A stretch of 64,000 bases of DNA from Paragordius varius (taxonomy: Eukaryota > Animalia > Nematomorpha): positions 9,982,001-10,046,000 of the forward strand of contig OZ176054.1 in the NCBI GenBank assembly GCA_964247055.1, read 5' to 3'. Under the pieces are notes generated by a model that was not told where the DNA came from, did not search any database, and saw only the letters and a program-made list of their open reading frames with translations. A program made the position numbers and the translations under genes. This document shows positions 1 to 28,700 of the stretch, piece by piece; the stretch's first letter is position 1, and each line of letters begins with the position of its first letter.

Positions 1-876
1 GGGTCAAATCTCATAAATTGTATTACCTGGATTTCTACCATCTAATCTTTTTCTACCTATTTCTATCTTTATTTAGAACAACAAATTATGGTTAAGAATT
101 ATATTTAAACCATAAAAATTTTAATATAAATTTTATTACCAGGCCTTGGTGGTTTAATATTCCTATCATCATTCACATTTGATCCCTGTTTATGATCTAT
201 GACGCAAATGTACCGTAATTTGATAGTTTATATTAAATATGATTTATCTATACCTGTTTCTTTAGGAACGTTATCATTGGGTTGATCATCCGAGAGTTTA
301 ACTAATGTCGCATAATATTTTGCACAATTTGTAAATAAATCTTTGAAGGTAATATACGGATTTGTAAAATACGGGATAATTTAGTTTATGTCAAAATTAG
401 TTTTAGGCATTTTATAATTATATCTAATGAAATTTAATTTATTTACAACATTAATACATATATAATGAATTTTCTTTAGTTTTTACCACCTCTATAAATA
501 TTTGATTGTTGAGTGAATAGTTCTTTATTTATTTATGAAAGCATTACTTCTTTTATCATCAGGTTCCCCATCAGAAGAGGTATCATCTGAATGTGGTCGA
601 TTTCGATTCGGGTTGGATGGTCCTAAATATTTTAGAGTGGGAATCGTACCAGCCTCCTCTTCGGGAATCAAACTATCTGCCTCCACGGTTTCTTGATCGT
701 TTAAAACATCAGCCATGTTCTGCAAATCTTTTTTAACAATAATTTTAACAAACATTATAAAAAATGTATAAAATATAACATAAATTCGATATATTTTAAC
801 CAGCCCAATATTTTAATTTTTAAGTCTCTAGATAACTCGAAGATTTTATTTAGATATTTCTCTTATTTATATGCTA

Positions 877-2538: not shown

Positions 2539-3213
2539 AAAAGAATTTTTAGGGCCGCCTGTGGCTTGTGAGCGGTTTGATTACCAATGTCTATATCAGG
2601 GGTGTGCAACATAAATGGCCTTTCGGGCGACATTTTTGTATCAGAAAATCCGTCGAATCGCATTCGCAAAATATATATGCACAAAGAAATATTTTAAATA
2701 AGCACAAGACTGTAAAAACTACAATTTTTTATTTTATGCTAGTTCCAAAATTCGGAACACTTTAAAACATTTGTTTAAAATAATCAATTTTACTTAGATT
2801 GCGTAAATTTTTTATTTAAATTTTGCGAGTATTTTTTATTGTTATTAAAGAATAAAAATTATTTTATAATAATGCAGGAGAATAAAAAGAAAAGTATCGT
2901 ACAATTTAAATAATTGAAAAAGTGTTGGATTTTGATTGGAAGTATTTGGTTGATATAGTATTAAGTTTGGTTGAAAAAAAAATCGAGTTTTTATAATAAA
3001 GGTGTATAAATTAAAAACATTTTAGTAAGATTTCTGGAAATATTTAAGATTTAATAATTATAATTTTATTTATCATGGGAACTGTATTATATTATGAGTT
3101 AATTTATTTATTCTAATTTTTATTTAATTATTTTGCTCATTAATAGAATATAGTGGGAAATTAAATACTTACCGGATGTTAATCCTTCAACAGCTAAATG
3201 ATGAGTTCCAAAA

Positions 3214-3216
<3 letters not shown>

Positions 3217-3258
<42 letters not shown>
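3217..3258. repeat. (AT)n microsatellite
   Basis: Pure AT dinucleotide run. Similar runs near 1020, 6775, 17018, 22728 and 46908. Confidence 0.95.
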
Positions 3259-3266
<8 letters not shown>

Positions 3267-6259
3267 ATATGTATGTATAAATTTCCGATTTTTAAATAAA
3301 ATCCTATGAGTTATTCTCTAGGAACTTGCTGGTTTCTAGATATTTTGAAACCCTCAAAGGAATTATATTAAATAATAAATTTCTTGGAGATTTTTTCAAC
3401 GAAAAATATAAAATATTATATATATAATAAAAAAGCAAATCAATAATTGGTAAATTACAAAATTTAATTTATCTGATAAAAAGGGTATGCGGATAATAAC
3501 ACTTGGACACAAACTTCTACAGTTCTCATGTCGGGCCCTTTAAGGATGAATTAGTTCACTCGATGTAATTTTTAAGTATTAGTTAATAATTATAGTAATA
3601 TATTTAATTATAAAAATAGTTTAGATTAGTAATTTATATATCGAATTCAAAATGTTGCTGAACGTGATTATATACCTGCGTTAAAGTCATCCGATACAAT
3701 GCCTAAAAGTTAAGATTGATTATGATGAAATATACTTTATACATCATCCAACCATGATTCAAGTTCCGCTATACATTATTTTTAATATAATACCGTTCGG
3801 ATTTTCTGCATTCAAAATTTCTAAATAGAGTAAAAAAATTTTTCTCCTTCCATATATATAATTAAAAGTGGGTATAATATGCTTTATAATTTTATATTTA
3901 TTACATTTAAAAAATTAAATAATCATTGGGGTCTAAAATACATTGTTACAATCTAAGTAAAATAACATTATAATGAAAACTGTTACCCACTAAAAGTAAT
4001 GAATTAGATGGACATGTTGTTTAAAAATTATTTTACTAATTGTTTATAAATTACCTTAATTAAATAATTTATATTTTATATAATCTTAAGTTATTTAATT
4101 TGATACCAAATGAAGTTTAATATTTTTCCAAAAAACAGACCAATTATTTTTAAACAGTTAGTTAAGAATTTAACTAAATAAATTATAATTTCATATATAG
4201 CATGAATAATTGAAAATATTAAAGAGGAATTTTGATATAATGGTTTAGGCGTCGAAGTTCTTATTTTTTGATAATTATACAAAGAAAAAGAAACTCTAAA
4301 CTGCATATTATATATAAACATTAGTATATAAATTTATCAATTTGTTTTTATGTATTACCTCCATTAACTAAAAATAATTTACCTTCGTTTTCGTTGATTT
4401 GATCTAAAATATCAAGTATAGAAAAAATTATATAAGACCATTCAAATTGTAAAATAAACAAAAAGAATCCCATGTTTATACATTTGTATGCAATTAATAA
4501 AGTGCCAAATTTAGTATCAAAATGCAGTTAGAGTTCAAAAAAATGGGGCTGTGTTACATATAAGATAAAGTCATAATTTTAAGTCATCCGCTGTTTTCAT
4601 CTTTATTTATAGATGAAAATTGGTATAATAAATTTAAAAAAAATAGATAAATTATAATAGGTGTGTTTCAAGCTGCGCAAAATTAATAAAAAAATACATT
4701 TTCAATGTAAACATATTAAAAATATTAAGTTTTATATATTTTCGTTTCTGAAGTACGAAAGGGTTTTACCTGTTTAAAATACAAAATTCAAACCTAGTAT
4801 AAGCAACAAACCTGATGCCTCCATATTTTACTTCTTTATTCCATTGATTTTATTTTAAAAATCTGTTTTTTTCGAATCTTGCTAAACACAGGCATATTTA
4901 TAATTAAATTTTATATTCCAAAGTTTCGCAGGTATTATTAGTATATATAAATAAATTTATTATAGTGATTCATAAAAACATATGTCTTTAATCATACTTT
5001 ATGTTTTTTTTCCTCATATGTAATGTGACCCCCGTTTTTTCGTGTAAAAATTCGTATTTTCTCCGCCAAAAATATGATTATTGGATAAATTTCAATATTG
5101 GCAATGAATTTCGCAAATTTAATATTTTAGAATGATTTTCAAACAAATATTCATGACTCCACATTTAATTTAAATATATAATAAACAATTGATTTTATAT
5201 ACAATTTTAATAGAAGTCTAAGAGATAGGAGATTGTTCAAGGCGATTTATGTACAGCCAAGTTACCGAAATACTAGTGATCAAACTTAATCACATGTCAT
5301 ATAGTTTAAAAGTTGAAAATTTTATGCCAACATTTTTATGAAAGATTCTGAGTTTGTGATTAAAAAAGATGACCATATGGATTATATAAAATGTAAATTA
5401 AATTTCCCATGACTCATTCATGTAATATTCATATAGGCGAATTCAAGGCTAAACAACTCTATCAACTGATTATTACAAAACCTTGTAATACGAAAATAAA
5501 AGAACCTCGATGACGCTGTGAGTCAAAAAATTAATTATTACACCTCCATTATAAATTTTAAGATTCTTAAAATTATTATAAATGTATGAGATAGATTACA
5601 AAATTTTTGCATATATTTCTCTTATATAGCGATTTTATCCAACTTTCTCTAAAATCTTTTTCTAGCTGAATCTATAAAAATTTGAAATAATCACCCAAAT
5701 TGTGTACACTCAAACAACGTAAATATAAAGAAAAAAATCATCTAAAACTTCCATTCAGCGGGCGGAATATCGTTGGCCCGGGTAGAGGAGATAAATGACG
5801 GCACAGGAGGCCTATCTTCTTCTAGTATTTCTTCAACATTATCCCACATTATATCTGCAACCTCAACATCTTCAATATATGTCGTATATTTTTTAATTAT
5901 TAATATTTAAAAATAATTAATTTGTTGCAAATGAATAAATCAAAGAAATTGTACAAAAATACAAAAAAATTGAAAAATAAAATTAGTTATTTAATTGCTA
6001 ATGTTTTATAGAGCAAAATTATCTTGAGTATAAAGACTATAAATATAGAAATTACCAAAGAAAAATTCATCGATATCATCCTCCAACGCTAGGTCGTTGT
6101 TCAAAAATTTTTCTATATTAGATATCATATCATTTCAATATATATGTGTATCAAACATTTTTTGGAACAGGTTGTGGATACAGTGATTTGGTAAAAAAAT
6201 ATTATTAATGTAATTTATATTTGTCGCCATGGCCATGCATGGGTAAAATTATTTTTAAA

Positions 6260-11100: not shown

Positions 11101-12330
11101 CAACAACCGAAAAAGCCAATTTCCCATAAAAATTGTTAAGGTTGGGTTTCGGTTTATATACCAAAAAGTATTCATCTTCATCATTAAAAGTTATTCCCTC
11201 TAAGTCCATTTTAAAACAATCTTTATCCTAATACAAAAATATATCGCACATCTTTATAAATTTATATCAAGCATAAGATAATATATCTAGACTAATTTAA
11301 ATGATATAATTTTTTGATAGTTTATTGATAGGAAATATGATTTGTAATAGTTTAAATCATGATATATTTAAAACACTTACACGAGTGATATCGGTAAGCG
11401 TGTCCAATAAAGCTTTACTTTTTGACTCCAAAAATATGTGATATTGGTCGGTTGGATTTAATTCCAAATATTTTGTACATACTTGCAAGATATTATTATT
11501 GATACAACCATAATCATCCTTAAGTATATTTTCGCTTTCTATATCACCAAAAAAGTGTTATTGTAAATAATTAGGGAAATGATTCCTAGTATTTAAAATA
11601 TAGTATTTGTAAAATGGTGCATCGTATGATTTAAACGATGATGCTTCAATATCAATTAGTTTATTTTCCATAGACCACCACTCTAAATACTAAAATATTA
11701 ACACTTTTTTGCATTCTGATTATCTCCATAAGCGAATTAAGAAAATTAAAATATCTTAGACAGATCCTGTGATATTGGGCCAAATTCAAATAAGAAATCT
11801 ACGGCTGGTCCACTATTAAAAAAATATATTTGAAAATTTAAAGGTGGAAATCCATATCTGAAATATATTACCGCTAAATTAATTCTAGGTTTTTGTCAAA
11901 AATAATTATATGATTAAATTTCGGGATTATTTAATGCAATGTATGACCTTTCGCTCGGTCGCACGCGTGGTGCCGAAGAATGGAGTAATATCTTTCTCTT
12001 TCTTTACTTTAATAAGCCTAATTTTTGGATCAGGGGAATTCATTTCAAGCCAAATATTATAATTTTAAAATATCTATATAAACGCTTTCATTTTTTAGTT
12101 TTTTTAAAAAAATTTAGCCAATATGATGTGTCTTTTTTGTTTTTTCTGTTGTCTTTTTGTTCTCTTTATAAATTTAAAATATAGTATCTAAATAAAAACT
12201 ACTTCAAGTATCTAATTCTCTCAACGGTCTAAAAATTTATTATAGATATCTCACAATTACTTGTCCGCCCGGTAACACAGGTGCCAAGACATGTATAAAA
12301 ATCTCCCTTTTTAAACCTTATATTTTATTT
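11101..12330 (-). pseudogene. Ectodomain-like exons, block B (degenerate)
   Basis: Exon 11381-11689 (YLEWWSMENK...DDYGCINNNILQVC...TDITR, donor GTAAGT, one in-frame TAA at 11558-11560) joins in frame to exon 11101-11227 (DKDCFKMDLEGITFNDEDEYFLVY...AFSVVG, donor GTATAT). Further broken frames upstream (IWLEMNSPDPKIRLIK; GLKREIFIHVLAPVLPGGQ). Confidence 0.55.
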
Positions 12331-12771
12331 TATTCTTTACTTTACCATATATTTAGTTCAAAAAATGATAGAATAGATTATAACATTTATTTACACAAAT
12401 TCATATCTTATTTTTGAGTTTAATTGTTTTTTATATGTTTTCTTTTTGATGCTTATATGTTTTCTTTTTGATGCTTATATGTTTAATCTTAGATAATAAA
12501 GTTAAATTCTCTTAAAATATTATAATCAAAATAATTATTTTAATGCATTTTATTGCTTCTTCTATTCACTACCTCCGATATACCCATTATCTCATAATCA
12601 CAGTTAAATGATTCTGTTTATTTTGTTATGTAGATATCTAGTTTATGATATGGTTCATTTTCATTTTTATGTGTATTTAAGATATCTTATAAGCTATTAT
12701 ATAGTTTGTAAACACTCAATCCATACACTACAAGTATCTGATCAAAGCTCCAGCCAATAGTTCATAAAAAT

Positions 12772-15733
12772 ATGCCAAATATTACAATAAATGATAAAAT
12801 ACTTATAAGAATTTGGAACGTCAGGGGAATCCAATTAAACATTTTGGTTATCAATAAAACCCATTACAAGGGCAATAGTGTTTTATAAAATGAAGAAAGT
12901 TGTATTTTATGTCGGATTTAATCCTAGCCCGATTAACTTAACATATATCATTGTGCATGCCCCTACAGCGGACTCCGAAAAAGAAAGAAAGATGCATTTT
13001 ATGAACAGCTCCAAGACTTAATAAACTCTGTACCTAAAAAGGATATTATTATAATAGGTGGTGATTGGAATAGTAAGATGGATCAAGATTACGACATGAT
13101 AGTGCGAAAACACGAAAGGAACGAGGTGAACGATTGATAGAATTCTCTATGATTAATATGTTTGTTGTGAATACATGGTATAAACGACATAAAAGACGGT
13201 TATACACCATGACCTCCCCTTGTGGGAAAATCAAAAACCAAATAGATTTTTTTATAGGACAATAAAAATGGAAAAAGTTTGAATTATGCTAAAACCAAGA
13301 AAAATTGTGACTGCTCAAGCTATGATCAACTATTAATAACAAATTTAATCGCACAATCCCGGAAGAAGGAATAAGATTACAAAGACAACGTAGAATAAAT
13401 CCCTTTATATAAGATAGAAGTAAACAATAGATTTCAATTCCTAGCTAAGACAGATAATTAATCATAAAACCAATGGAATAATATTAAAACAATAATTCAT
13501 GAGACAACACAAAAATATTTACCAAAGAAAAAACATTATATAAAGAGTTATCATATGACTGTATAAAAATAATTGAATAAAGAAAAAGAGTTAAAAATAG
13601 AGGGGAAATAGATTGGTTAAAAAAATAAATTCTAGTCTCCAGAGACAAAAAAGGAAGGGCCTGGAGGAATATTGGAATGAAACGCGATTATTGAGGAAGC
13701 AATCAGAAAAGGCTTAAATAAACCTCTGTTTCAAACCATTAGAATAAGAAATCAATACCAACTTCCAAATTGACGACGAATAGAATTTAGACAAAAATTG
13801 GAAAGTTAGACCAAACAGCTATATAGTGACTCCCAGGTAAAAATGATAAAAACATATATGGGAATGGGGATGATGAGTTGTGTATATGAAGAGGTGGTAA
13901 AAGCTTTATCGATACCAATAAGGAAAGCCTCTGGAATATACCATTTGCACTTCAGTCCTTGAAATGTTCAAGTTGGTTCTTGAACATTTCAAGTTGGTCT
14001 TTGAATTTTTCAAACTGGTGCTTTGACTTTTTAGTTTTATTTTTACCTTTTATCAATCAATGGCATATCATTCATCTATTTTATCTTTTTAACCTATTTT
14101 CTATTATTTAACATAAGTTTTTAATCAATATCAACTTTTAATCATTGAAACCATATATTTTTTAAAAAATATAAAAGTTTTCTGAATTATTTACAATTTT
14201 TTATTGATTAAAAGTTAATAATTTTGTTAAATTGGAAAGAAATAAGTTTGAAACAAAAAAGTAGTTTTTGAACAAATTATTTTAAAATGAATAAATATAT
14301 AATAAATAAAGAAAATTAAAAAAGTAATACCATTAAAAAATACATGCAAAACGACCAACTTGAAATGTTCAACCAATTTGAAGTGTTTAAGAAGACTCTT
14401 GAAGTGTAAATGGTATTAATAATCCCTGGAAATAATAAATGTTATACCTATATCACTTCTGGGAGTCAGTTATTTGGCCAAAACACTGGCAAAGTTCACT
14501 GTCAATCCCAGTTTTTAAAAGGGGAGATAAACAAACTGCGTGAACTATAAATAACTCTTATTAGTCAAAGCAAGGCAAAACAGTTTACATCAAGTGAGAG
14601 CCAGAGAGATTCCAGATGTTCAAGCAGGATTTATAGGGCGTAGCACAAGAGTTCACATTAACGTAAGACGCATAAAAAGCTGTAAATATTAAGTCGAGTT
14701 AGTTATGTGTTGTATTGATTGTACCCAGGCTTTTGACTCGATTGACCAGGTACATTGGCAAAGTTTGGAAGCAATGGGAGTTACAGCAAAGCTTATAACC
14801 TTTCGCAAAAATTTGTATGAACACCAAAAAGCCATAATACCAACCCCGATGGGCAGAACCAACAATATTTCAATACAGATAGGTGTTAGACAAGGATGTT
14901 GCCTCTCACCATACTTGTTTAATATTTGTACAGAAATGATCTTGAGAAAATACTACAGAAAGCCTTAGGATAGGATGGAGAAATCGAAGATTCGCAGATG
15001 ACATGACGCTGATTGATAATGTAGATAGTTAATAATAAAGGTAGTAAGAGAAGACAGTAAAAGATATGGATTGAACCTCAATCCTAGAAATCAAAGTTAT
15101 TAATTTATTAAAAAACAAATCTAATATAACCATAGACGACACCCCAGTAGAAGTAGTAAATGAAATCCTATTCTTAGGCTCTCTAATCGATGTCAACGGC
15201 TCTTCCGCGCATATTAAACACCGCATAGCATTAGCGAAGCCAACTGCGAACAAGCTGACCTAATTATGGTTAAGTAAAGATATCACTATGAAAAAGTGAA
15301 AGTAATAAAATGCGTAGTTTTTCCGGTAGCGACTTAAGCTGCCGAAAGTTGAACACTAAAACTGAATGATAAAAAAGGATTACAGCATTTAAAATGTGTT
15401 GTTAAAGGAGAATGTTGAAAATAAGATGGTCTGATAGGTTAAGAATAAAATTATAAGAGAAATACTAAAATTGAAAGACACTTAATGGGAGCAAAGAAAG
15501 TTCACGTACATTGGGCACATTTGAAGTGGTACATACCTTGAGTAGGATTTGATTTTTGGGAAAGTTGAAGGGAAAAGAAAAAAGGAAGACCCATGTTAAG
15601 ATGGCTGGATACTGTAATGAAGGAATCTGGTAGATTAGGGGATCGAAAGAAGTAGCATGGGAAACGTGGATAGAACTGGTCATTTTAATTTCCAAGGGGT
15701 CGAACTCGTCCTAAAGGAATTACCTACCTACCT
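12772..15733 (+). mobile_element. Degenerate non-LTR retrotransposon (RTE-like LINE)
   Basis: APE motifs IWNVRG, VHAPTADSE..FYEQLQDLINSVPKKDII..GDWNSK. RT motifs AFDSID, GVRQGCCLSPYLFN, RFADDMTL. Ends in (TACC)n. Many stops and frameshifts. Confidence 0.9.
13941..14413. mobile_element. TA-flanked MITE with CCATTT termini, nested in the LINE
   Basis: TIRs CCATTTGCACTTC / GAAGTGTAAATGG, TA on both sides. Splits the LINE KASGI/NNIP motif. Confidence 0.85.
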
Positions 15734-15735
15734 AT

Positions 15736-16050
15736 GATCTGACAACAAATGTTTGGCATTTTTAGAATCAGCTGTTTTTTGATGAGATCCAAATTAAAGT
15801 GTAAATATTTGTTAAAAAACTGTTAAAAATAAATTATGAGTTTATACAATTATATGTTTGATGAATATTTTTTAGCCATAATACCATATAATATTAAATT
15901 ACCAAATGATCACATGAAATTCAAGGTAATGAAGTCAGGACCACTTGTAGCGACAAAACTCAAATCTTAAGATTAAATTGATATATTCTTTAACTTTTAA
16001 CAAATTCGACACACACAAACACACACACACGCACACACACACAGCTACAC

Positions 16051-16092
<42 letters not shown>

Positions 16093-16323
16093 TTTCTTTT
16101 ATGGTTTATAAATATGGCCTCTACTGACATTGGTAAATTTATTATTATTTAAAAAATTTAACAAATTATGGTTTTCAGTATAGTTAATAGATGTTTTTAT
16201 ATTGATTTAAAGTTTATTCATGGTCTGTACTGCAAAATAATCAATATTGAACGTATATTTAAATATGGCTTAAAAGATAGTTTAAATTTAAAAATTTGCT
16301 TTAAATTACTCACCAGTAAGTGT
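15736..16323 (-). pseudogene. Residual exons between blocks C and B
   Basis: DGETLTG with donor GTGAGT (16303-16323); DLSFVATSGPDFITLNFM*SFG phase-1/phase-1 exon with an internal TGA (about 15900-15962); ADSKNAKHLLSDH abutting the LINE 3' tail. Confidence 0.35.
16010..16090. repeat. Compound (CA)n-(TA)n microsatellite
   Basis: Visible dinucleotide runs. Confidence 0.9.
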
Positions 16324-17032
16324 CTCGCCATCGTCTACAGTTTCAATATATATTTTAAAATTCTAGAATTTAAATTAATACAATAAATATAAATAGATTT
16401 GGCACGTTATAATATTATATATATTATTATATAAACATTACATAATTTGTTAATAATTTATAAATAACTATGTCGAGCCCTTAATAAGGCTGAAAGTCAT
16501 ATATCGCTATTATAGGATGAACTGATGTTTAAACCAAGGGTTGTAAACCAAATTGGTTTCGCGGGCCGCATATAGAAAAATGACGGGCGAGTTTATAATA
16601 TATTGTAAAAAAATGAGCCAATAATATTTCGCCAATTTCCTGAAAATTAACAATCATGATTTTTAAAGTTATCTAACTTACCCTAGAACGATCTAGTATA
16701 TTAATGTATATTATCTCAAAAAGATATTTGGCCTGACATCATACATCTTAACGCACCCAAAGTGATGAGATATGTTGACTATATATGCGTTCATTAGCTA
16801 AATGACTCTTATTTCCAAAGGCTATGCTTTAATGTGACGACATTGGTTGGTATACTAGGAAATAAAGCTTTAGGTAAAGCTTATTTCACACACATCCTCA
16901 AATTTAAATTATCAATAATTAAAGTAGCGTATATGTGTAGGAAATGATAATGATGGTTATTTTTTAATATTTTTATTTTTTTATTTATAACATCTCTTGC
17001 AAATTGACAAAATCAGAATATATATATATATA

Positions 17033-18301
17033 TACTATGTGCAAAAAAGAGGGTCATTTTGATTTAACGAAAAAAATTTTTTTTCATGAGATAGCTTATG
17101 ACCAGCGTATTCATTTGCCGCAGAAATTTTTATTTGTTGACAACCTAGTTTTTGGAATATTAAGAGATAATCGAAATAGGGCAAAAAGTGAAAATTAAGG
17201 ATAATCAAGGATAAATCAAAATATAATGATAAAATTTGATATATTATGGTTTATTATCTAGGAGATATTTTCAATATAAAAATAGCCTAAAATCATATAG
17301 TTAGGGTTTCTATAAAATTTAAGCTCAGAAGATGGCGTTTTTCTTTTATCACACTTTTAAAACAAAAAAATATAATGAAAATATATTATAATTTTTTAAA
17401 TAACTCCTAAACTCACTATTAAAATCTTAAGATTCATATTTTATTCAGTAAAAAATACCTATATATCAAAATAAACCCAAAAATATTGTTTTTTATTTTG
17501 TATTTTTTTGTCATCTGGTTTATGAGTGTATAAAAAATTTATACTGTTTTATTTTGGATTTTTACATTAGTGGTAATTATTAAGTATATAATTTATGCAA
17601 AATAGGATTAAAAATTAGTGGAATATCAACCAACAATCCGTACAAATCCCAATACAAATATTAATTTGTCATAAAACATACTTGTTACAGGAAATTGTAA
17701 GGATTGTTGGTTGATATTCCACTACTTTTAAATCCTATTTTGCATAAATTATATAGTTAATAATTCCTAATCATGTAAGAATCCAAAATAAAACAGTATA
17801 AATTTTTTATTTACTCATAAACCAGATGACAAAAAAAAGCAAAAATAAAAAACAATATTTTAATTTTATTTTGATATAGAAGTTTATTTTCCATAATATA
17901 TGAATGTTAAGATTTTAGTAGTGAGTTTTGGTAGTAAATAATTAAAAAAATTTTTTTAATATAGGTTCATTAAAACTTTTTTGTCTTTTAAGTGTGATAA
18001 AAGAAAAACGCCATCTTTTGACCTGAAAAGAAACCCTAACTATATGATTTTAGGCTATTTATATATATAAAATATCTCTTAAAATGATAATAAACGATAA
18101 TATTTTAGATTTTATCATTATTTTTTGAATTATTCTTAATATCCTTAATTTTCACTTTTTGCCCGATTCCGATTTTCTTTCAATATTTCAAAAACTAGGT
18201 TATCAACAAATAAAAATTTTTGCGGCAAATGAATACGCTGGTCATAAGCTATCTCATGAAAAAAAAATTTTTTTTCGTTAAAAATTTTTTTGCACACAGT
18301 G
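17033..18301. mobile_element. Foldback-type non-autonomous DNA transposon (CACTGTGTGC termini)
   Basis: Long imperfect inverted arms (tttcatgagatagcttatgaccagcgtattcatttgccgc and its reverse complement). Same family as 25651-28311. Confidence 0.85.
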
Positions 18302-18642
18302 AATATATATATTGATTGCCCTATGTTTTAGCCTAGTGCATATACTGTATTTTTACAATGATAATAATAAATCATTACTATGGTTTTGAAAAATTTGAAA
18401 TTCAAAGCATTCCTAATAATTTTTATTGGAAGAACCAATATTACTTGTCAAATTAAAAAAATATGGAACAAGAACATGTAACTGCCTATAATATGAGTAA
18501 AAGAATAAACTGTTATTAATTAATATTTATTTTTATGTGATATTATATAGAATTTTAAATTACAATTTTAATTTTATTTTATAGTTTTCAAATATTTCGA
18601 GGAAGTAAAAAATAAGGAGCCGCAGTTACTCATGATATAAAC

Positions 18643-18852
18643 CAGGGGTTTAGCACGGGGCAGTCCGATACATTATGTGCGGCCCGTGAAACAGTTGAAA
18701 AATAATTGAAAATACGATTTCCATACTTTGAATATGCAAATGATTGAGTAAAAAGAATTTTTTATTCTGTATCATTTTTACAAACGAAAAAGAAATTATT
18801 CGTAAAATAAATTACACATATTTTCTGCATTTTTATCGTGTCGGCATCCCTG
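18643..18852. mobile_element. hAT-type MITE
   Basis: CAGGGG...CCCTG termini. 8-bp flanks ATATAAAC / ATTTAAAC (7 of 8 match). Confidence 0.7.
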
Positions 18853-18898
18853 ATTTAAACAAGAATTTTCAAAGCTTAAAATCATAAATTAAACTCAC

Positions 18899-20993
18899 AG
18901 TAAAAAGCTGTTTCTATTTGACGAGATATATCCCTTTCTCTGCCATATTCTGTTTGTAACATTATAGTGTAATTCCCGGGCTCAATGTTTTCTACCACGA
19001 ATCTTGTGTCATTCTATTTTGATTTGTAAATTTTTATGCAATTAAACTATTTTCTTTTAAGATAATTGTAGAAAGCTTTTAAAATTGGTGATCCAGAAAA
19101 TTTTATTATTGAAACAATATGAAATATAAATAAAATTTGAGGTGTATTTTCAGCTATATAGCGGTGATGTATGGCAGGTATTATAATGTTTAAACACAAC
19201 CACATTTATAACCAAAAAAAATTAAGGAGGCCTTAAATTATTTTATTTATCAAGCAAGCGTTTTTACTATGAAAGGTTTATGATAATTATATAATATGCA
19301 TACCAAATAATTAACTCTTGTTATTCGTTTCTTACCATCCAAGTAGAAAATAACCCTGCCATTTTGATCTGAAGCTAGCGATAATTCATATTCAAAAATA
19401 TAATTTCTTCCATTTTCTCCATCCTCAATCCACATATCATAACCTTGAATCCCATAAATTGATGATTTTCTGTCAAAGCAGTTACTTTTGTCCAACACTT
19501 TATGTATATATTATTAGTAATAAATTATTAACGATATTAAATTTACCTTGTTTAAATCAAAATAATGCGTTTCAAATTTATTGAAAATTTACCTGATTTA
19601 ATTAGGTGCAAAAACAGTACACATTATAAAAGATATGTTTTTATAGAAATTTACAACTAATATTAGGTTTCCAGGTCTACTACGTTTTTCAGTAAAATTA
19701 CAGTATGAGTAAATATACATTGCTAGTTTTTCATTAACTATTGCCAAATAGCATATACAGTAAAGGGCAGTATTATTGGCATATAGTTATTATTTCACTT
19801 TTAATTAGCCAATAATAATTCTCGCTGCATAGGCTATTTGGCACTATTTAATAAAAAACTAGCAATGCATAATCATACCGTAATATGTGTTTGTGTTACC
19901 ACCACTTCTTACATTTAAAGACATAACATTTTAATGGACAAAAGCCAAAATATAATTGGTAGAATTAAATATATTTTATATAATAACAATAATAAACAAT
20001 TAAAGCTATTAACCAGTATTGGGTACATCAATTTTGATCGAGAGACAATCATCAGTTTGTGAGATAATAGTTGATGTTACGTTGGAGTTAGAAAAATATA
20101 TATTTTCTTCAGTATCTGTTTTTTACACATAATATTTTACCGTTATATGGCTTTATTGTCGTATCTAAAAACGGATCATTACATAAAAAAATTTTACCGG
20201 CTTGAAAGGATGGGTTTACGGGAACTTTTAGGATAAAACTAGTGACTAGGAAATTTATCATAAATTTTACCATTATCGGTTGCTATATCCACGCATAAAA
20301 ATAGATTTCGTTATGAAGAAGCAATTTAATAAGACAAAATGCATGATAAATATATACTTTCTGTGTCGGATATCGATATATCTTGGTTGGTGTCTGCATG
20401 AAAGAAAATATAATATTAAAATCCTTAAAATCATAATTTTTGTAAAAATGTTTGTTACGAAATCCGATTGGTTTACATCATGCCTAACCAAAAGCAATCG
20501 AAGACCCTTATTATTGCAGATTACAAAAACTGATTTTTTTCTAAATTAAGAATTAACAATAATATTTCTTACTTGAGAAAGATAATCCTTTTGATCCAAC
20601 AAGGCCCCCAATCAAACCTTAAATTTTATCATTTTATATACCTCCAATCGTAGTTATTAGAATGCCTAAATAGTATATCAAAGAAAAATTAACCTCCAGC
20701 CAAGAGTCCGCCTATAAGCATGTTGAGTAAATATAAGAAATATCATTATATTATTTACATTGAAAAGCATACTACCTTTGCTAGCTATAAAAATTTGTTA
20801 TTATAATTTGTAATTAATATCATTTACAATATATATAATATTATGTCATACCTAATGCCAATTTACCTAAATTTTATAAATATATGTTGCGTTGAATTCA
20901 AGGAATAATTAATTAAAATTATCAAAATACCACTTAAGGCTCCTAAAAGGGAGCTTTGAAGCGCCGTTGGAATTTTAGAAATTGATTTGGGTA
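18899..20993 (-). CDS. Micro-exon gene block C: glycine-zipper hydrophobic segment followed by an ectodomain-like region
   Basis: Twelve consecutive phase-1/phase-1 GT-AG exons with no stop: 20931-20993, 20852-20866, 20776-20784, 20694-20711, 20642-20665, 20573-20617, 20489-20506, 20358-20393, 20271-20282, 20198-20245, 20141-20164, 20014-20115. Further clear exons 19336-19497 (LDKSNCFD...RVIFYLDG, GTAAGA) and 18899-19013 (NDTRFVVENIEPGNYTIMLQTEYG..., GTGAGT). The linking exons between these are less certain. Confidence 0.75.
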
Positions 20994-21079
20994 CTAAATA
21001 AAATCACTCATATTAAATATTTGCACAAAACAGATAATTGTTGATCTAACGCGTTCCCCATTTCGAAGTTAGTATATAT

Positions 21080-21334
21080 CAGGGGTGTCCAACGCGCGGC
21101 CCTCCAAAATATATATGCAGCCCGAGAGAAATTTAAAATAGAAATTTTTACGAAAACTAAATTTAATTTATTTTATAATATAATTTTCTTAATAGTTTTT
21201 TCCGAATTTGCAATAATATACAGTAAATTTTACAGTTTCATGCTTAAAATCTAATACAATAATTATTAATGCAAATAATTTCGCTTTTGATAGAAAAATG
21301 CGGCCCACTAAGCTATTTGTGTTGGATGCCCCTG
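21080..21334. mobile_element. hAT-type MITE
   Basis: TIRs CAGGGGTGTCCAAC / GTTGGATGCCCCTG with partly conserved 8-bp flanks. A related left end lies near 2598. Confidence 0.75.
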
Positions 21335-21368
21335 ATATAGATGAAAAACTGTGATCATCAAAATAATG

Positions 21369-22720
21369 TCACATCTTTTTAAAATATACTTTGGAACCTC
21401 GTAATCCTTAAAATTTGTTATTTTAGAAACAATTGGTCGTAAGGGTCTTATATTTAAATACCTGATCTACCATATAATCTCGTTTCTCTACCATTATTTC
21501 TACCATCATTTCTACCTATATTCAAAAAAGATATAAAATATTATTTGAACCATAAATTTAAAAATAAATTTTTTACTGGGTCTTGGCGGTTTACCATTAT
21601 CCTTTTTGTTATTTAAACCCTGTTTGTTATCTATATAAATTAATTAACAATTTAATAGGATGTTGATAATAGAGATCAAATTCATTAGAAATTTCTTGCA
21701 CAATAAGTAAACCTTCTTCTTTAGGAACGTTTTCATTGGGTTGGTTATCAGATAGTTTAACTAATAATATTAAAAATATATATGCCCGGAAAATGTATAA
21801 TATTAAAATTAACGGGAATGAATTAAATGGAAAGATATAAGCATTTATGTATACTCCTAGAAATAAATTTTAGTTATGTGACAAAACATCAACATAATTA
21901 TTAGGGTAAAACCAATTAAAATTTATATACCCATGAATTTTTAATTTAAGTCGATTTCTAAATTTGTATGTGAATTACCTCTTTTATCGTCAGGTTCTTC
22001 TTCGGAAGAGGTGTCGTCTGGACGTGATCTATCTCTATTCGGGTCAGATGGGCCTAAAAATTTTAGCGTAAATCGTACCAGCCTCCTCTTCTTCTGGATT
22101 CGAACTTTCTGCTTCCATCTCGGATTCTTCACTGTCGCTTAAAACATCAGCCATGAGCTCCAAATCTAAAATCAACAAATAAGGATTTGCTAGCTTTTAT
22201 CAGATGCAGTTATATTAAAATAAATTCAATATCCTCATATCTTTATTAACGATCATTTATTACATTACGTAGCAAATAGGGATTCTAAAATGCTATATTT
22301 ATAAATCATATATTATTTGATAGCTATGCTCTCATACAGTTGACAATGTAGAAAAAAGGTATTTTAATTTTTCTGCTATTATTTAAAATCATAAAATCGC
22401 ATTCTTTTCGCCATTAGGTGAAAATAAATGGAGAAAAACGCCTCAACAAATTCCTAATATATATACCATAAAAATACTCTTGAACGCAAAATGTTATTGG
22501 TAAGATATTGAAAATTTAAAAAATCCTTGAACTTCCAGGTACTAATGATAAAAAATTATATTTTGGTGTCAAATTCGAATTGAAACTTGTTATTACACGG
22601 TAAAAGATTTCATATTTTACCCAATATATCGCATTCATGATTTAGGCCTTATATCAAAAAATAATTTTTTGCAACGCACCATCTGGAAGTAGCGTGTAAT
22701 TTTCTCAAGCCTTAAATATA

Positions 22721-22765
<45 letters not shown>

Positions 22766-25700
22766 AAATATATTATAATTCCTTTCCTGTACATATCGAT
22801 GGAGGTAACAAGATCGATCGACTCAGTTTTATTTGGAAAGTTTTTTGCCCAAAACCGCATAATAGACAAAATGGTACCAAAATGCTTAGCAAAAAAACTC
22901 CCAAATTAAAAATCGAGTTAGATTTTTTTTTCTCCATCAAATTGTATAGGAAAGGTGCTATAATACATAAATTGCATGTTTTATTAAAATTTACGCTACT
23001 TCCGCTTTGGTGTAAATAGCAAAAAATATTTTTTCATCGAAGCCTTAAATCAATTGGGTAACTTGAAATACATATGAAATACAGTCATGTAGACTTTATA
23101 TTGTTAAAGATTTACTTTTTTTCGTTAATTGGGTATTAATATTTGGTAAAGAATATAAAAACAAGAGCAATATGGTATTACCATATCATATTCTTTAAAA
23201 AAAAGTAAAAAATGAAGGGGAAGGGCGTCGGAAATCTTTGGTAAAAAAATGGAAATACACTAACTACTAACCCTTCACTTAAATTTGATGGATATTTTGT
23301 AATGTTAAATTTTGAGAATATTATAGCATTATGTTAACATTTGAATTGTTACGTATTTAGATGAGGAATTTTGTGGGTTTTTAATAATAATTTAATAAAT
23401 AGTAAAATGGGTATTTTATTATTTATGATTCATAATTAAATTCAATAATTACTATTTTCAACATGATAAATACCTGTATTAATCGATATTGGTATTATTT
23501 TATATAGTTGTTATTAGTAATTAAAATACAGGTTATATATTTGTTAAAATTTAAGTAGATTTTGGATTGTTTTTGTTTTTATGTTATTTATTGTCAATTT
23601 TTATATTGACATTTTAATCAAGTAAAAATTGCGGTTTTTAAATTAAGTCAAATTTAATTTTTTTTATTTAACATTGTTAATTGTAATTAATTACTACATA
23701 TTTGTAAATTTTAAAAAATACAGGTAAAAATGGCGGTTTTTAACAAATTTCAAATTTAATTTTTTTTTTGTATCATTGTTTTTGTTATTAATTATCAAAT
23801 ATTTTTGACATTTAAAAAACATGTGAAAATTGCGGTTTTTAATAAAATTAATAAAGTTTTAATGTTTTGTTCAACCTTGCTAATTTATTCAAATGATAGT
23901 AATTTTTACCTGTATATATTAATGTACCAAAAATATATAGGACATAATAAATTAGCGAGGTTGAATAAAACATTAAAAATTTTACTAATTTATTAAAAAC
24001 CGCAATTTTTACCTGTATTTATTAAAATGACCAAATAAATTAATTACAATTAACAATGCAAATCCTAAAAAACAAAAACTCAATTTTTATTAAATTTATT
24101 AAAAACTGCAATTTTTACCTGTAATTATTAAATTGTCCACAATATGTAATTAATTAACAATTAAAAAAAATTTGAAACCGCTATTTTTACCTGTTTTTTT
24201 TAAATTTCCAATATGTAGTAATTAATTACAAATAACAATGCAAATCCTAAAAAAGAAAAAATTTAATTTAACTAAATTTATTAAAAACCACAATTTTCAC
24301 CTGTAATTATTAAAATCACAATATGTCATTAATTACAATTAACAATGTTAAATAAAAAATAAAAAAAATTAAATTTGACTTAATTTAAAAACCGCAATTT
24401 TTACCTGATTAAAATGTCAATATAAAAATTGACAATGAATAACATAAAAACAAAAACAATCCAAAATCAACTTAAATTTTAACAAATATATAACCTGTAT
24501 TTTAATTACTAATAACAACTATATAAAATAATACCAATATCGATTAATACAGGTATTTATCATGTTGAAAATAGTAATTATTGAATTTAATTATGAATCA
24601 TAAATAATAAAATACCCATTTTATTTATTAAATTATTAAAGATAAAAACCCACAAAATTCTGCATCTAAATACGTAACAATTCAAATGTTAACATAATGC
24701 TATAATATTCTCAAAATTTAACATTACAAAATATCCATCAAATATAAGTGAAGGGTTAGTAGTTAGTGTATTTTCATTTTTTTACCAAAGATTTCCGACG
24801 CCCTTCCCCTTCATTTTTTACTTTTTTTTAAAGAATATGATATGGTAATACCATATTGCTCTTGTTTTTATATTCTTTACCAAATATTAATACCCAATTA
24901 ACGAAAAAAAGTAAATCTTTAACAATATAAAGTCTACATGACTGTATATGATGGCAAAATTAAAAACTTCTTTTTTCTATACAAAGTTTATTGAATTCGA
25001 ATGTGACGCCAAAGTGTGATTTTAGCATTACTGTAAGCAACCGTCTGAAAATTTTTAAAATCTTTATCGATATTATTTAGCGTGTGTAAGCATATACTTA
25101 TGTTATCAAATAAAATTTGTAATTTTATCCGTTATATTTAATTTCATTCGACCTATTGCACAAAAAGAATGCGATTTTAATGGCAGGAAAAGTTTAGATA
25201 AATTTTTGCGTTCATTGGCACCGCATTTTATTTTAAATATCTTGTTTTAGCTATCAAAGATTTATAATTAGAGCATTGTTGCTGCGCACCCTGTTTTAAT
25301 CCTAAAAAACATTTTATATTATATTATAATATATTTAATATATAATGTAAACAAATTTATTTTCAAAGAGAGTCGCCATTCGACCTCATTAAAATTTTTC
25401 CCATTATTCTTAAAGATGAAGTAAACCGTATACCAAAAAGATTTTAGTGAAGTATTATTTTGATGACAGTTAAATCAATTATTTTGTAGTTTAAGTTAGT
25501 TATTTATAATATTCTATTAATGTTTCAGATAATCATAGCTTTGAGCTTTTGAAATCAGTTATAACTTGGATGACTGTTCATTCTCCAATCTAATATATTA
25601 CTAGACGTTTACAAATAATCGGTTAAAATAATATGAATGATTGAATATAGCACTGTGTGCAAAAATATTTTTAACAAAATAATTTTTTTTCATGAGATAG

Positions 25701-28700
25701 CTTATGACCAGCGAATTTTTTGCCGTAAATTTTATTTGTTGACATAGTTTTTGAAATAATGAGTAAACATCAAAATTGGGCAAAAAGTGAAAATAAAGGA
25801 TAATTAAGGATAATTCAAAAAATAATGATGAAAGTGGAAATTTGGTTTATTATCATTTTAGGACATAAAATAGCCTCAAATCATATAATTACGGTTTCTT
25901 AAAATCTCAAAAGATGGTCTTTTTCTTTTAACACACTTAAACGACAAAAATGTTTTATGTAACTATATTAAAATAATTTTTTTAAATTATTTCCTAGATA
26001 AACGTACTATTATAATCTTAACATTCATATTTTATTTATAAAAAAATACTTATATACCATTTTTCATGCAAAAACATCATTTTTTCAACCAAATGCAACA
26101 TTTTTTCAACCATAAGCAACATTTTTTCAAGCAAAGACAACATTTTTTCAAGCAAACGCAACATTTTTTCAAGCAAAGACAACATTTTTTCAAGCAAACG
26201 CAACATTTTTTCAAGCAAAGACAACAATTTTTCAAGCAAACGCAACATTTTTTCAAGCAAACGCAACATTTTTTCAACCAAAGACAACATTTTTTCAAGC
26301 AAACGCAACATTTTTTCAACCAAAGACAACATTTTTTCAAGCAAAAACAACAATTTTTTAAAAATTAAAAATCATTTTTTTATTTTAAGACATATTAAAT
26401 TTAATATTAATGCAAATCAATTTTAGCGTAGAATTATGATTTTTATTATTTTATCATCAATATGTGATGGTATGATTGATTTTTATACATAATTTTGCCC
26501 ATAAATTGCATTATTTATATTTTTTTCTATACAACAGTTTCACTTAATCAATAAATACAATTAGCGCGGTCTTTGTAGGTTTAAAGTTCCTTTCATTATT
26601 TGCATTTGCAAACAACCGTTATATTTTTTTATATATAAACTAATATTTTTATTTATTAGTATTTGAATCAAAAATAATATTTTTATAGTAAAAACATCTT
26701 TATTTGTTTCGAACTAATTTTCTTTAAATCAATATTATGAACTTATTAATGTTTTAAACTAAATATTACGATTAATAACCCACAAATCCTAGATTTTTAA
26801 TAATGTTAAATTTTTTATAAAAAATAATATGGATATACGGTTCTTTTGAAAGAAAGGTATTCCTTAAAAGTTTAGGAAATAAAGGAAATAAGTTAATGAT
26901 AGGATAGATTATTATATTGCTTGATTAATAAAAGTCAGAATCAAAAAATATTGAAGGACCAAATTGAAGTCTAGGACCAAATTTAAATTTTCAAGGACAA
27001 TCTTGAAGCGCAAAATGTATAGACTGATAAGGATATACTAAAGTTGTAAAAGAAAAAAATAATATAAATAATACAATTTATGGGCAAAGTTTTGTTTGAA
27101 AATCAATCATACCATCACATATTGATGATAAAATAATAAAAATCATAATTCTACGCTAAAATTAATTAGCATTACCATTAAATTTAATATGTATTAAAAT
27201 AAAAAAATGGTTTTTAATTTTTAAAAAATGTTGTTTTTGCTTGAAAAAATGTTGTCTTTGGTTGAAAAAATGTTGCGTTTGCTTGAAAAAATGTTTTCTT
27301 TGGTTGAAAAATGTTGCGTTTGCTTGAAAAAATGTTTTCTTTGGTTGAAAAAATGTTGCGTTTGGTTGAAAAATTGTTGCGTTTGCTTGAAAAATTGTTG
27401 TCTTTGCTTGAAAAAATGTTGCGTTTGCTTGAAAAAATGTTGTCTTTGCTTAAAAAAATGTTGCGTTTGCTTGAAAAAATGGTGCGTTTGGTTGAAAAAA
27501 TGATGTTTTTGCATGAAAAATGGTATATATCAAAATGCAACTAAAATATATTGTTTTTTATTTTTTCATTTTTTTGTTTCTCGGTTTATTACGGTATAAA
27601 AAATTTACTGTTTTTTCGGAATTTCACATGAGCGGAAATATACAGTATATAAATTAATTCAAAATAAAATTCACAAGTATTGGAAAATCAACCAAAAACC
27701 CATACATATCCCAGTAAAAATTTTAATTTGTGTTAATACAAACTCTTTACTGATTTGTAAGAATTTTTGGTTGGTATTTCGCTAATTTAAATCTTATTTT
27801 GCATAAATTACATAATTAATAATTCCCACTCATGTAAGATTCCAAAATAAAACAGTATAATTTTTTATGACAAAAAAATAAAAAAATAAAAACAATATTT
27901 TTTAGTATTATTTGATATATGTTTTTTTACTGATTAAAATATGAGTGTTAAGATTTTAGTGAGTTTAGCTATTAAAAAATTATTTTAATATAGTATAAAA
28001 AAATTTTGTCGTTTAAGTGTGTTAAAAGGACGCCATCTTTTGAACTAAGATTTTATAGAAACCCTAACTACATGATTTTAGGCTATTTATATATGCTCCT
28101 AAAATAATAATAAACCATAATATCTCAACTTTTGTCATTATTTTTAGAATTATCCTTAATTTTCAATTTTTGCCGAATTTTTTCTTAATATATCAAAAAC
28201 TAGGTCGTCAACAAATTAAAATATTTGCGGCAAATGAATATGGTGGTCATAAGCTATCTCATAAAAATTTTTTTTGTTAAAACAAATTAACCATCTTTTT
28301 TGCACAAAGTGTCGTCACTTATAAGCATGCCATATATTTTAGGCTATCAATATTTGTTTTTAACGTCTTTGTTATTCATATTGCGCACCCGTTTCGAGTT
28401 TTAACTTTAAGAAAAATAAAGGTAACATTTAAAAAGCATCAAAAATACGTCAATCTTTAATTTATTTTGTATAGAAAAAATTGTTGTAAAATAAAAAATT
28501 GTATCCATTTTGAATTTATTTAAATACATTAATTTTTAGAAGTTCAACCGAAGCTTTTTACAAGTTTACAAAATATTAAGCATTAAATATTTACCAAATT
28601 GTAGTCCTTCAATAGCTAAATTGTATCGCAAAATAAGTATATTATATATATGTCGCAGTAAAAATAATCAAAAATATAGTTCCGTGTTCAGTATTTTTGG

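What the first reader, a model, noticed from the sequence alone, without database searches (positions are those of the whole stretch)
20014..20993. Twelve consecutive symmetric phase-1 micro-exons: a micro-exon-gene (MEG)-like system
Seen: exon sizes 63, 15, 9, 18, 24, 45, 18, 36, 12, 48, 24 and 102 nt, all multiples of 3, all phase 1, with no stop across the chain. The ORF track misses it entirely. Known: schistosome MEGs use symmetric micro-exons to generate variant host-interface proteins by exon skipping. Inference: any subset can be skipped in frame, so this may be an independently evolved combinatorial diversification system.
Basis: partly seen in the sequence, partly recalled or inferred. 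Interest (0 to 1): 0.88.

Follow-up and report, generated by a model that had tools for sequence, protein, structure and literature searches.

The report
Small-exon membrane protein gene, unproven skipping
The twelve tiny exons are real and form the back two-thirds of a hidden 17-exon gene, one of a duplicated family, that most likely encodes a small membrane-anchored protein; nothing shows that the exons are shuffled to make variants, and no RNA data could be found.

Summary
On the minus strand, 20993-20014 carries twelve AG...GT-bounded exons of exactly the stated sizes. All are phase 1 and open. They are the 3' part of a 17-exon, 241-codon gene (ATG 22154, stop 20011-20009) in which all 16 introns are phase 1 and seven are only 24-33 nt.

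Such a chain alone is not beyond chance in this 27% GC DNA: shuffled sequence gives similar chains. Independent evidence makes the gene real:
- A tandem paralog (716-27) keeps the same exon layout, with dN/dS 0.33.
- Exon length changes between the paralogs come only in threes.
- The model is an outlier for codon bias and for exon-intron GC contrast.
- Differences seen in other contigs (paralogs or alleles) fall mostly on third codon positions.

The product has an acidic disordered head, a glycine-zipper membrane span and a short tail with N-glycosylation sites. It has no signal peptide and no detectable relatives.

It resembles schistosome MEGs and elastin in its frame-neutral exons, but it fails two MEG criteria: only 21% of the CDS lies in exons of 36 nt or less, and there is no signal peptide. 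The short introns favour constitutive splicing. Exon skipping remains untested because no RNA was found. The scan has flagged over 1000 similar notes in this genome, probably a horsehair worm's.

The parts
22079..22154 (-). Exon 1, coding part (76 nt), ATG at 22154: MADVLSDSEESEMEAESSNPEEEEA
   Evidence: ATG and sequence are kept in the paralog. In-frame TGA TAA lie upstream. The donor G|gtacga opens a 25-nt intron that must be removed to keep the frame.
21979..22053 (-). Exon 2 (75 nt), acidic/Ser-rich
   Evidence: The paralog has the same 75-nt exon with the same borders.
21713..21760 (-). Exon 3 (48 nt)
   Evidence: The paralog has the same 48-nt exon. The alternative 144-nt acceptor at 21856 is not conserved.
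21577..21630 (-). Exon 4 (54 nt; donor chosen from the paralog)
   Evidence: The paralog lacks the GT at the shorter donor and conserves coding sequence up to the 21577 donor. Its exon is 57 nt, a difference of 3.
21462..21515 (-). Exon 5 (54 nt), basic Arg/Asn/Gly-rich
   Evidence: The paralog counterpart is 30 nt, a difference of 24 nt, in frame.
20931..20993 (-). Exon 6 (63 nt), first exon of the finding; amphipathic lead-in to the membrane span
   Evidence: AG/GT borders, phase 1. A paralogous contig aligns over the exon but not over the flanking introns.
20852..20866 (-). Exon 7 (15 nt)
   Evidence: AG/GT borders, phase 1. Support is from the model only.
20776..20784 (-). Exon 8 (9 nt)
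   Evidence: AG/GT borders, phase 1. A paralogous contig aligns at 20763-20795.
20694..20711 (-). Exon 9 (18 nt), start of the glycine-zipper span
   Evidence: Skipping it lowers the best hydropathy window from 2.06 to 1.64.
20642..20665 (-). Exon 10 (24 nt), core of the span, flanked by introns of 28 and 24 nt
   Evidence: Both flanking introns carry in-frame stops if retained.
20573..20617 (-). Exon 11 (45 nt), end of the span
   Evidence: Two differences seen in other contigs are both synonymous. This bin has the highest summed contig depth within the gene (about 7000 against about 650).
20489..20506 (-). Exon 12 (18 nt)
   Evidence: AAG acceptor, GT donor, phase 1. Support is from the model only.
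20358..20393 (-). Exon 13 (36 nt)
   Evidence: A paralogous contig covers it without indels, while the adjacent intron has five.
20271..20282 (-). Exon 14 (12 nt)
   Evidence: A paralogous contig covers it without indels.
20198..20245 (-). Exon 15 (48 nt)
   Evidence: A paralogous contig covers it without indels.
20141..20164 (-). Exon 16 (24 nt)
20009..20115 (-). Exon 17 (102 nt of the finding plus GT TAA): end of the CDS, stop at 20011-20009
   Evidence: Three differences seen in other contigs are all synonymous, and the only exonic indel is a net 3 nt. An ATTAAA lies about 75 nt downstream (read). The G|GT at 20014/20013 could instead be a donor.
27..716 (-). 5' part of the tandem paralog (exons 716-650, 622-548, 301-254, 196-140, 56-27); the rest runs off the window start
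   Evidence: It has the same five-exon phase-1 layout, dN/dS is 0.33, and the long introns are no more alike than shuffled sequence.

Best explanation
Window 22154-20009 (minus strand) is a real protein-coding gene of 17 exons and 241 codons, one of at least two tandem copies of a lineage-restricted family.

Predicted product: a single-pass membrane protein with these parts.
- About 100 residues of acidic, Ser-rich, disordered head with no signal peptide.
- A basic juxtamembrane stretch.
- An amphipathic lead-in and a 22-residue glycine-zipper span (GGLLAGGILITTIGGLIGGLVG).
- An 85-residue Thr/Ser/Asn-rich tail with three N-glycosylation sequons.
The likely topology is N-terminus in the cytoplasm and tail outside or in the lumen. 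The glycine zipper probably drives self-association in the membrane.

All 16 introns are phase 1 and all 15 internal exons are multiples of 3. I infer that splicing is essentially constitutive and works by intron definition, because 14 of 16 introns are 24-95 nt. I also infer that the uniform phase is a property of this genome's gene style and not a device of this locus. In this AT-rich coding sequence G sits mainly at codon position 1, so G|GT donors fall in phase 1. Frame-neutral exons also make splicing slips harmless.

Shown: exon chain, gene limits, paralog conservation, coding signal. Inferred: topology, oligomerisation, constitutive splicing, origin of the phase bias.
For: - Exon chain and borders.
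- Complete ORF of 241 codons from a conserved ATG to TAA.
- Paralog with identical exon count and phases. Exon length differences are 9, 0, 0, 3 and 24 nt, while intron lengths differ freely (25/27, 218/246, 82/57, 61/83).
- dN/dS 0.33 with dS 0.59 over 89 codons. The two longer introns are no more alike than shuffled sequence (0.64 vs 0.59; 0.54 vs 0.52).
- Codon-usage log-odds, trained on two unrelated ORFs of the window, is +58 bits in the predicted frame against -17 and -97 in the other frames, and negative for the introns.
- Against 50 stop-free best chains elsewhere in the window, the model is the extreme for log-odds per codon (0.232 vs 0.004 +/- 0.063, max 0.129) and for exon-minus-intron GC (0.161 vs 0.031 +/- 0.035, max 0.103).
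- Of 14 differences inside exons seen in other contigs of run X2 (paralogs or alleles), 9 are synonymous third-position changes. One-base indels fall only in introns, and the one exonic indel is a net 3 nt.
- Hydropathy peak of 2.06 at residues 134-152, three sequons after it, and an acidic N-terminus.
- G content is 33% at codon position 1 against 16% and 10% at positions 2 and 3. 61-76% of protosplice-like sites are in phase 1, and 13 of 16 donors follow a G.
- No Rfam family at the locus.
Against: - No RNA evidence at all. The only RNA-labelled run laid (X6) gave no contig on the locus, and no RNA run held the words.
- The last exon (34 aa) has no match among 1.84 billion protein representatives, so no spliced ORF of this gene appears to be on record there.
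- Five micro-exons (15, 9, 18, 18 nt and partly 24 nt) rest on the model only.
- Composition explains only part of the phase bias: 0.61^16 is about 4e-4 and 0.76^16 about 0.01.
- One paralogous contig has a stop at codon 115, so at least one copy may be decaying or spliced differently.
- Topology and function are predictions from sequence alone.
- Introns of 24-28 nt are below the usual animal minimum. They are supported here only by frame necessity and by the conservation of the 25/27-nt intron 1 in the paralog.
Confidence: 0.6

Rival explanations
1. MEG-like diversification system. The frame-neutral exons are skipped in varying combinations to give a population of protein variants, for example at a host-parasite interface.
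For: - All 15 internal exons are symmetric, and no exon-exon joint can create a stop.
- 12 of the 15 can be dropped without touching the membrane span.
- The gene belongs to a duplicated family.
- The organism is probably a parasite (unchecked notes; GC match).
- Uniform phase 1 is only partly explained by composition.
- Elastin, with the same 1:1 layout, is alternatively spliced in cassette fashion.
Against: - No signal peptide, and only 21% of the CDS in exons of 36 nt or less, against the definitions.
- dN/dS of 0.33 shows no diversifying selection.
- The paralog keeps every one of the five comparable exons.
- Introns of 24-95 nt favour intron definition, under which intron retention is the usual variant, not exon skipping (general knowledge, not tested here).
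- No RNA data either way.
Confidence: 0.12
2. Not a functional gene: a chance chain of AG..GT open segments, or a decaying copy of a gene family.
For: - Random and shuffled sequence yields chains of similar length and exon number.
- No transcript and no protein match.
- One paralogous contig carries a stop in exon 6, and another a 46-nt net deletion in the last exon.
Against: - Intact 241-codon frame from a conserved ATG.
- Purifying selection against the paralog.
- Strong frame-specific codon bias and GC contrast.
- Indels restricted to introns or to multiples of 3.
Confidence: 0.08
3. A very divergent C19orf12-like glycine-zipper protein of organelle membranes (mitochondria, ER or lipid droplets), with the glycine-rich stretch forming a membrane hairpin and not a single span.
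For: Pfam PF20721 (C19orf12-like) is the best match of the 63-residue glycine-zipper segment, at E = 0.0043, residues 19-53 on profile positions 40-74 of 163.
Against: - 17.3 bits is far below the family cut-off of 30, and only 35 of 163 profile positions are matched.
- The match lies in a low-complexity Gly/Leu stretch.
- The C-terminal 76 residues match nothing.
- The long acidic head has no counterpart in that family (from my knowledge of the human protein, not tested).
Confidence: 0.07
4. The 17 exons are one module of a much larger all-phase-1 gene. The G|GT at the end of the last exon would be a donor, and the conserved AG 11 nt before each ATG an acceptor, so that the tandem copies are joined in frame.
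For: Both sites exist and are phase-compatible. The reading from the AG into the ATG is open in both copies. An earlier unchecked note describes tandem arrays with an acidic head, a glycine zipper and FN3-like repeats on the same sequence piece.
Against: - 19 kb of repeats and satellites separate the copies.
- A stop follows at once if the end of the last exon is unspliced.
- Each copy starts with a conserved Met-Ala-Asp-Val-Leu.
- No coding signal was found downstream.
Confidence: 0.04

Closest known systems
Schistosome micro-exon genes (MEGs)
   Same: - Runs of symmetric exons, some as short as 9-18 nt.
- Invisible to ORF finding.
- Member of a duplicated family.
- In-frame removal of any internal exon is formally possible.
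- A few MEGs are membrane-anchored (PMC5825161).
   Different: - MEGs have about 75-80% of the CDS in 6-36 bp exons and a signal peptide. Here the figure is 21%, and the N-terminus is acidic.
- No sequence similarity was found.
- Introns here are mostly 24-95 nt.
- Alternative splicing is not shown.
- Selection is purifying (dN/dS 0.33).
Tropoelastin (ELN) gene
   Same: Every splice site is phase 1:1, so exons are frame-neutral cassettes (bioRxiv 10.1101/2024.12.03.626628). Glycine codons are often split at junctions here: 5 of 16 junction codons are Gly.
   Different: [quoted passage not shown] This gene has no similarity to it, has a membrane span and has no RNA data.
C19orf12-like glycine-zipper membrane proteins (Pfam PF20721)
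   Same: A Gly/Leu/Ala-rich zipper preceded by Lys and Gly; this family is the best Pfam match of the segment.
   Different: The score is below the family threshold, only the zipper matches, and the head and tail are unrelated.
Chicken BG genes (cytoplasmic tail encoded by many 21-nt exons)
   Same: A membrane protein whose tail is encoded one structural unit per tiny symmetric exon.
   Different: There each exon encodes one heptad of a coiled coil. Here exon sizes vary from 9 to 102 nt and no heptad pattern is seen.

Membership tests
Schistosome-type micro-exon gene (MEG) | About 75-80% of the coding region made of micro-exons of 6-36 bp (PMC5825161, PMC4015677) | tested here: not met
   8 of 17 exons are 36 nt or less. 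Together they make 156 of 726 nt, or 21%.
Schistosome-type micro-exon gene (MEG) | Internal exons symmetric (multiples of 3, same phase on both sides) | tested here: met
   All 15 internal exons are multiples of 3 and all 16 introns are phase 1.
Schistosome-type micro-exon gene (MEG) | N-terminal signal peptide; secreted or exposed product | tested here: not met
   The N-terminal 19-residue hydropathy is -0.87 and the first 100 residues are acidic. No conserved upstream exon was found: collinear similarity with the paralog ends about 78 nt before the ATG. An internal membrane span with sequons after it could still expose the tail.
Schistosome-type micro-exon gene (MEG) | Protein variants produced by exon skipping | not testable with these tools
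   No RNA run holds the locus. RNA-labelled run X6 laid nothing.
Schistosome-type micro-exon gene (MEG) | Sequence homology to a described MEG family | tested here: inconclusive
   The last exon has no match in 1.84 billion representatives, and there is no Pfam match. The whole spliced protein could not be searched because it has no reference.
C19orf12-like (PF20721) | Score at or above the Pfam gathering threshold over the family domain | tested here: not met
   17.3 bits against a cut-off of 30; 35 of 163 profile positions matched.
Elastin-like all-phase-1 cassette gene (architecture only) | All splice sites phase 1:1 | tested here: met
   16 of 16 introns; definition.
Elastin-like all-phase-1 cassette gene (architecture only) | Documented cassette-type alternative splicing | not testable with these tools
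   No RNA data.

The most novel reading that the evidence does not exclude
This gene is one visible member of a genome-wide class of all-phase-1 micro-exon genes in a non-flatworm animal (probably a horsehair worm). That class would have evolved independently of schistosome MEGs and would be combined with sub-30-nt introns. Its frame-neutral exons would in fact be used in varying combinations, here to vary the juxtamembrane and outer parts of a self-associating membrane protein.
Probability: 0.12. Interest if true: 0.8.

Novelty: new variant of a known kind. Interest (0 to 1): 0.45.

Why it matters
If RNA confirms the model, the locus shows an animal spliceosome joining exons of 9-24 nt across introns of 24-28 nt. 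One example is 18-nt exon, 28-nt intron, 24-nt exon, 24-nt intron, 45-nt exon. Together these build a single transmembrane helix from three exons. That would be a demanding test case for ideas on the minimum size of introns and exons.

It also adds a well-delimited, paralog-supported example to what looks like a genome-wide style of frame-neutral small-exon genes outside flatworms. I found no paper describing such genes in Nematomorpha in the held library.

Practically, it warns that standard gene finding will miss such genes, and that an "all symmetric, no stop" chain in AT-rich DNA is not evidence by itself.

Tried and rejected
1. RNA support. Two run searches and the single read-laying run gave no RNA contig on the locus.
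2. A cross-species exon/intron divergence test using the runs labelled organism B and C. Their contigs are nearly identical to the window (0-1 differences per 114-305 nt) at depth 2-8, so they give no divergence.
3. A naive chance test of the chain. It does not discriminate, and I replaced it with codon-bias and GC-contrast tests against stop-free chains.
4. Homology. The last exon against 1.84 billion representatives gave nothing. Pfam on the zipper gave only a sub-threshold C19orf12-like hit. Pfam on the tail gave nothing.
5. A search for an upstream signal-peptide exon by paralog comparison found none.
6. Recent tandem exon duplication as the origin of the micro-exons. Only AT-rich chance repeats were found.
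7. The alternative 144-nt form of exon 3, which has a hydrophobic stretch, was rejected because it is not conserved in the paralog.
8. The 36-nt form of exon 4 was rejected for the same reason.
9. A structured-RNA reading: no Rfam match.
10. Not done: searches, structure prediction and exact look-up with the whole spliced 241-residue protein. It has no reference and I did not type it.
11. The DeMarco 2010 and Berriman 2009 papers are not held.

Full report
**What is there**

The window is AT-rich (22-33% GC in 2-kb steps) and eukaryotic. Read on the minus strand, 20993-20014 contains twelve segments of 63, 15, 9, 18, 24, 45, 18, 36, 12, 48, 24 and 102 nt. Each follows an AG and precedes a GT. 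All are multiples of three and all are read in phase 1. The 414-nt chain has no stop. No ORF of 90 aa or more is listed there.

**The gene is larger than the finding**

Upstream on the same strand lie five more exons, again all phase 1:
- 22154-22079, starting with the ATG
- 22053-21979
- 21760-21713
- 21630-21577
- 21515-21462

The last exon reads G|GT TAA. The model has 17 exons and 241 codons. Its introns are 25, 218, 82, 61, 468, 64, 67, 64, 28, 24, 66, 95, 75, 25, 33 and 25 nt. The 468-nt intron holds a MITE-like insert. Thirteen of the 16 donors are GTA and three are GTT, and 13 of 16 follow a G. Acceptors are TAG, AAG or CAG after an A/T-rich run.

**Is it more than chance?**

Not by the pattern alone. 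A dynamic-programming search for the longest AG..GT phase-1 open chain gave these results:

| Sequence searched | Chain length | Exons |
|---|---|---|
| The locus | 942 nt | 16 |
| Its opposite strand | 717 nt | 14 |
| First-order shuffles | mean 572 nt, max 1155 nt | mean 13 |
| Other stretches of the window | median 585 nt | - |

"All symmetric, no stop" is therefore cheap in such DNA. Four independent lines of evidence make this chain real.

1. **A tandem paralog.** It starts at 716 on the same strand and runs off the window start. Its first five exons (716-650, 622-548, 301-254, 196-140, 56-27) have the same order and the same phase.
   - Exon lengths differ from gene A by 9, 0, 0, 3 and 24 nt.
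   - Intron lengths differ freely: 25/27, 218/246, 82/57 and 61/83 nt.
   - Over 89 aligned codons dN is 0.19 and dS 0.59, giving dN/dS 0.33.
   - The two longer introns are no more alike than shuffled sequence. Only the 25/27-nt intron 1 is well conserved (22 of 25), as expected if it is almost all splice signal.
   - The paralog also settled two ambiguities: the acceptor of exon 3 and the donor of exon 4.
2. **Codon bias.** With codon frequencies taken from two unrelated long ORFs of the window, the spliced CDS scores +58 bits in the predicted frame. The other two frames score -17 and -97 bits, and the concatenated introns score between -160 and -290 bits.
3. **Comparison with stop-free chains.** Against 50 stop-free best chains found elsewhere in the window, the curated model is the extreme on both measures.
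   - Log-odds per codon: 0.232, against 0.004 +/- 0.063 with a maximum of 0.129.
   - Exon-minus-intron GC: 0.161, against 0.031 +/- 0.035 with a maximum of 0.103.
4. **Divergent contigs in run X2.** Laying the contigs of a deep DNA run of the same organism at 80% likeness brought in divergent contigs, some clearly paralogous.
   - Of the 14 listed differences that fall in exons, 9 are synonymous third-position changes.
   - One-base indels fall only in introns. One paralogous contig covers exons 13-15 without an indel while their introns carry six.
   - The one exonic indel is a net 3 nt.
   - Summed depth suggests two to three copies for most of the gene and more for the zipper exon and the last exon.

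**What could not be shown**

No RNA was found. Neither run search returned an RNA run holding the locus. The one RNA-labelled run I laid gave no contig. The runs labelled organism B and C carry almost identical DNA at depth 2-8, so they gave no cross-species test. The 34-residue last exon matches nothing among 1.84 billion protein representatives. So no spliced ORF of this gene seems to be on record there, and the family has no close annotated relatives.

**The protein**

- Residues 1-100 are acidic and Ser-rich, with hydropathy between -0.9 and -3. There is no signal peptide.
- A basic stretch follows, then an amphipathic lead-in and the span GGLLAGGILITTIGGLIGGLVG. The best 19-residue window scores 2.06 at residues 134-152.
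- An 85-residue Thr/Ser/Asn-rich tail follows, with three N-x-S/T sequons and one Cys.
- More basic residues precede the span than follow it. With the sequons behind it, this suggests the N-terminus is inside and the tail outside.
- Pfam gives only a sub-threshold C19orf12-like match to the zipper (E = 0.0043, 17.3 bits, cut-off 30) and nothing for the tail.

The span is encoded by exons 9, 10 and 11 (18, 24 and 45 nt), separated by introns of 28 and 24 nt. Both introns carry in-frame stops if retained.

**Comparison with MEGs**

Published definitions require about 75-80% of the CDS in symmetric exons of 6-36 bp, a signal peptide in nearly all members, and variants produced by exon skipping (PMC5825161; PMC4015677).

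- Symmetry is met: 15 of 15 internal exons.
- The micro-exon share is not met: 21%.
- The signal peptide is not met. No conserved upstream exon was found, because collinear similarity with the paralog ends about 78 nt before the ATG.
- Skipping is untestable here. Formally every exon is skippable: all exons end in G or A, so no joint can make a stop. Only skips of exons 9-11 weaken the span, to 1.57-1.64.
- The evolutionary signal is purifying, not diversifying.
- Introns of 24-95 nt are in the range where, from general knowledge of splice-site pairing, the intron is the recognised unit and skipping is uncommon.

The all-1:1 layout is shared with tropoelastin genes.

**Why all phase 1?**

- In this CDS, G makes up 33% of first codon positions but only 16% and 10% of second and third positions.
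- 61% of G|R sites and 76% of MAG|R sites lie in phase 1.
- 13 of 16 junction codons are GNN: five Gly, four Asp, three Val and one Ala.

Composition therefore pushes donors into phase 1, but it cannot alone give 16 of 16 (0.61^16 is about 4e-4). No recent exon duplication is visible. Selection for frame-neutral exons, or the way such genes arise, must contribute. This is inference.

**Context**

Earlier notes of this scan (AI notes, mostly unchecked) report more than 1000 micro-exon observations and many 21-30-nt introns in this genome. They guess a horsehair worm.

- I checked only the paralog lead, which held for its five in-window exons.
- The window's GC content equals the 26.93% published for Gordionus montsenyensis.
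- A neighbouring GPCR ORF is nearest to nematode and arthropod clusters. This is weak support for an ecdysozoan.
- Only two unrelated papers in the held library mention micro-exons together with Nematomorpha.

**Verdict**

This is a real, previously hidden, small-exon gene for an orphan glycine-zipper membrane protein. Its architecture resembles MEGs and elastin, but it is not a member of the MEG kind as defined. The diversification idea is neither shown nor excluded, and on present evidence it is the less likely reading.

Noticed in passing
window 21075-21339: MITE-like insert inside intron 5, with terminal inverted repeats at 21075-21093 and 21321-21339 and TA-rich flanks. Depth in run X2 is 12,000-28,000 against about 650 for single-copy DNA. 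A paralogous contig lacks it (joint 21004->21493).
   Followed up: partly
window 19714-19871: Palindromic element just 3' of the gene, with 47-nt arms that are 87% complementary. Depth in X2 reaches 465,000, which implies hundreds of copies in the genome.
   Followed up: partly
window 22165-22166 and about 728: An AG|ATTTG motif 11 nt upstream of the ATG is kept in both paralogs, and the frame from it into the ATG is open. It could be a 5'UTR intron acceptor, a trans-splice acceptor or the start of a coding exon.
   Followed up: no
window 20958 (exon 6): One paralogous contig, also present in the runs labelled organism B and C, has CAA>TAA at the position of codon 115. An internal TTTTAG|GAGCC acceptor at 20943/20942 would leave a 12-nt phase-1 exon behind that stop. 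This copy is either a pseudogene or uses an alternative 3' splice site.
   Followed up: no
window 623-649: In the paralog, intron 1 is 27 nt, in frame and stop-free, so its retention would add nine residues. In gene A it is 25 nt and must be removed.
   Followed up: partly
window 26036-27540 and 2776-3270: Satellite-like tandem arrays that give long artefactual ORFs on both strands lie a few kb upstream of both paralogs and resemble each other at 60-70%.
   Followed up: no
window 57000-58901 (+) and 62503-63993 (-): Two long single-exon ORFs. The first is a rhodopsin-type GPCR with a long third loop, and its nearest Atlas clusters are nematode and arthropod Srw/FMRFamide-receptor-like. The second is also multi-pass by eye.
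   Followed up: partly
runs X5 and X11 laid on window 19700-22300: Runs labelled as two other organisms hold nearly identical DNA of this locus at depth 2-8. This points to cross-contamination, mislabelling or very close species.
   Followed up: no
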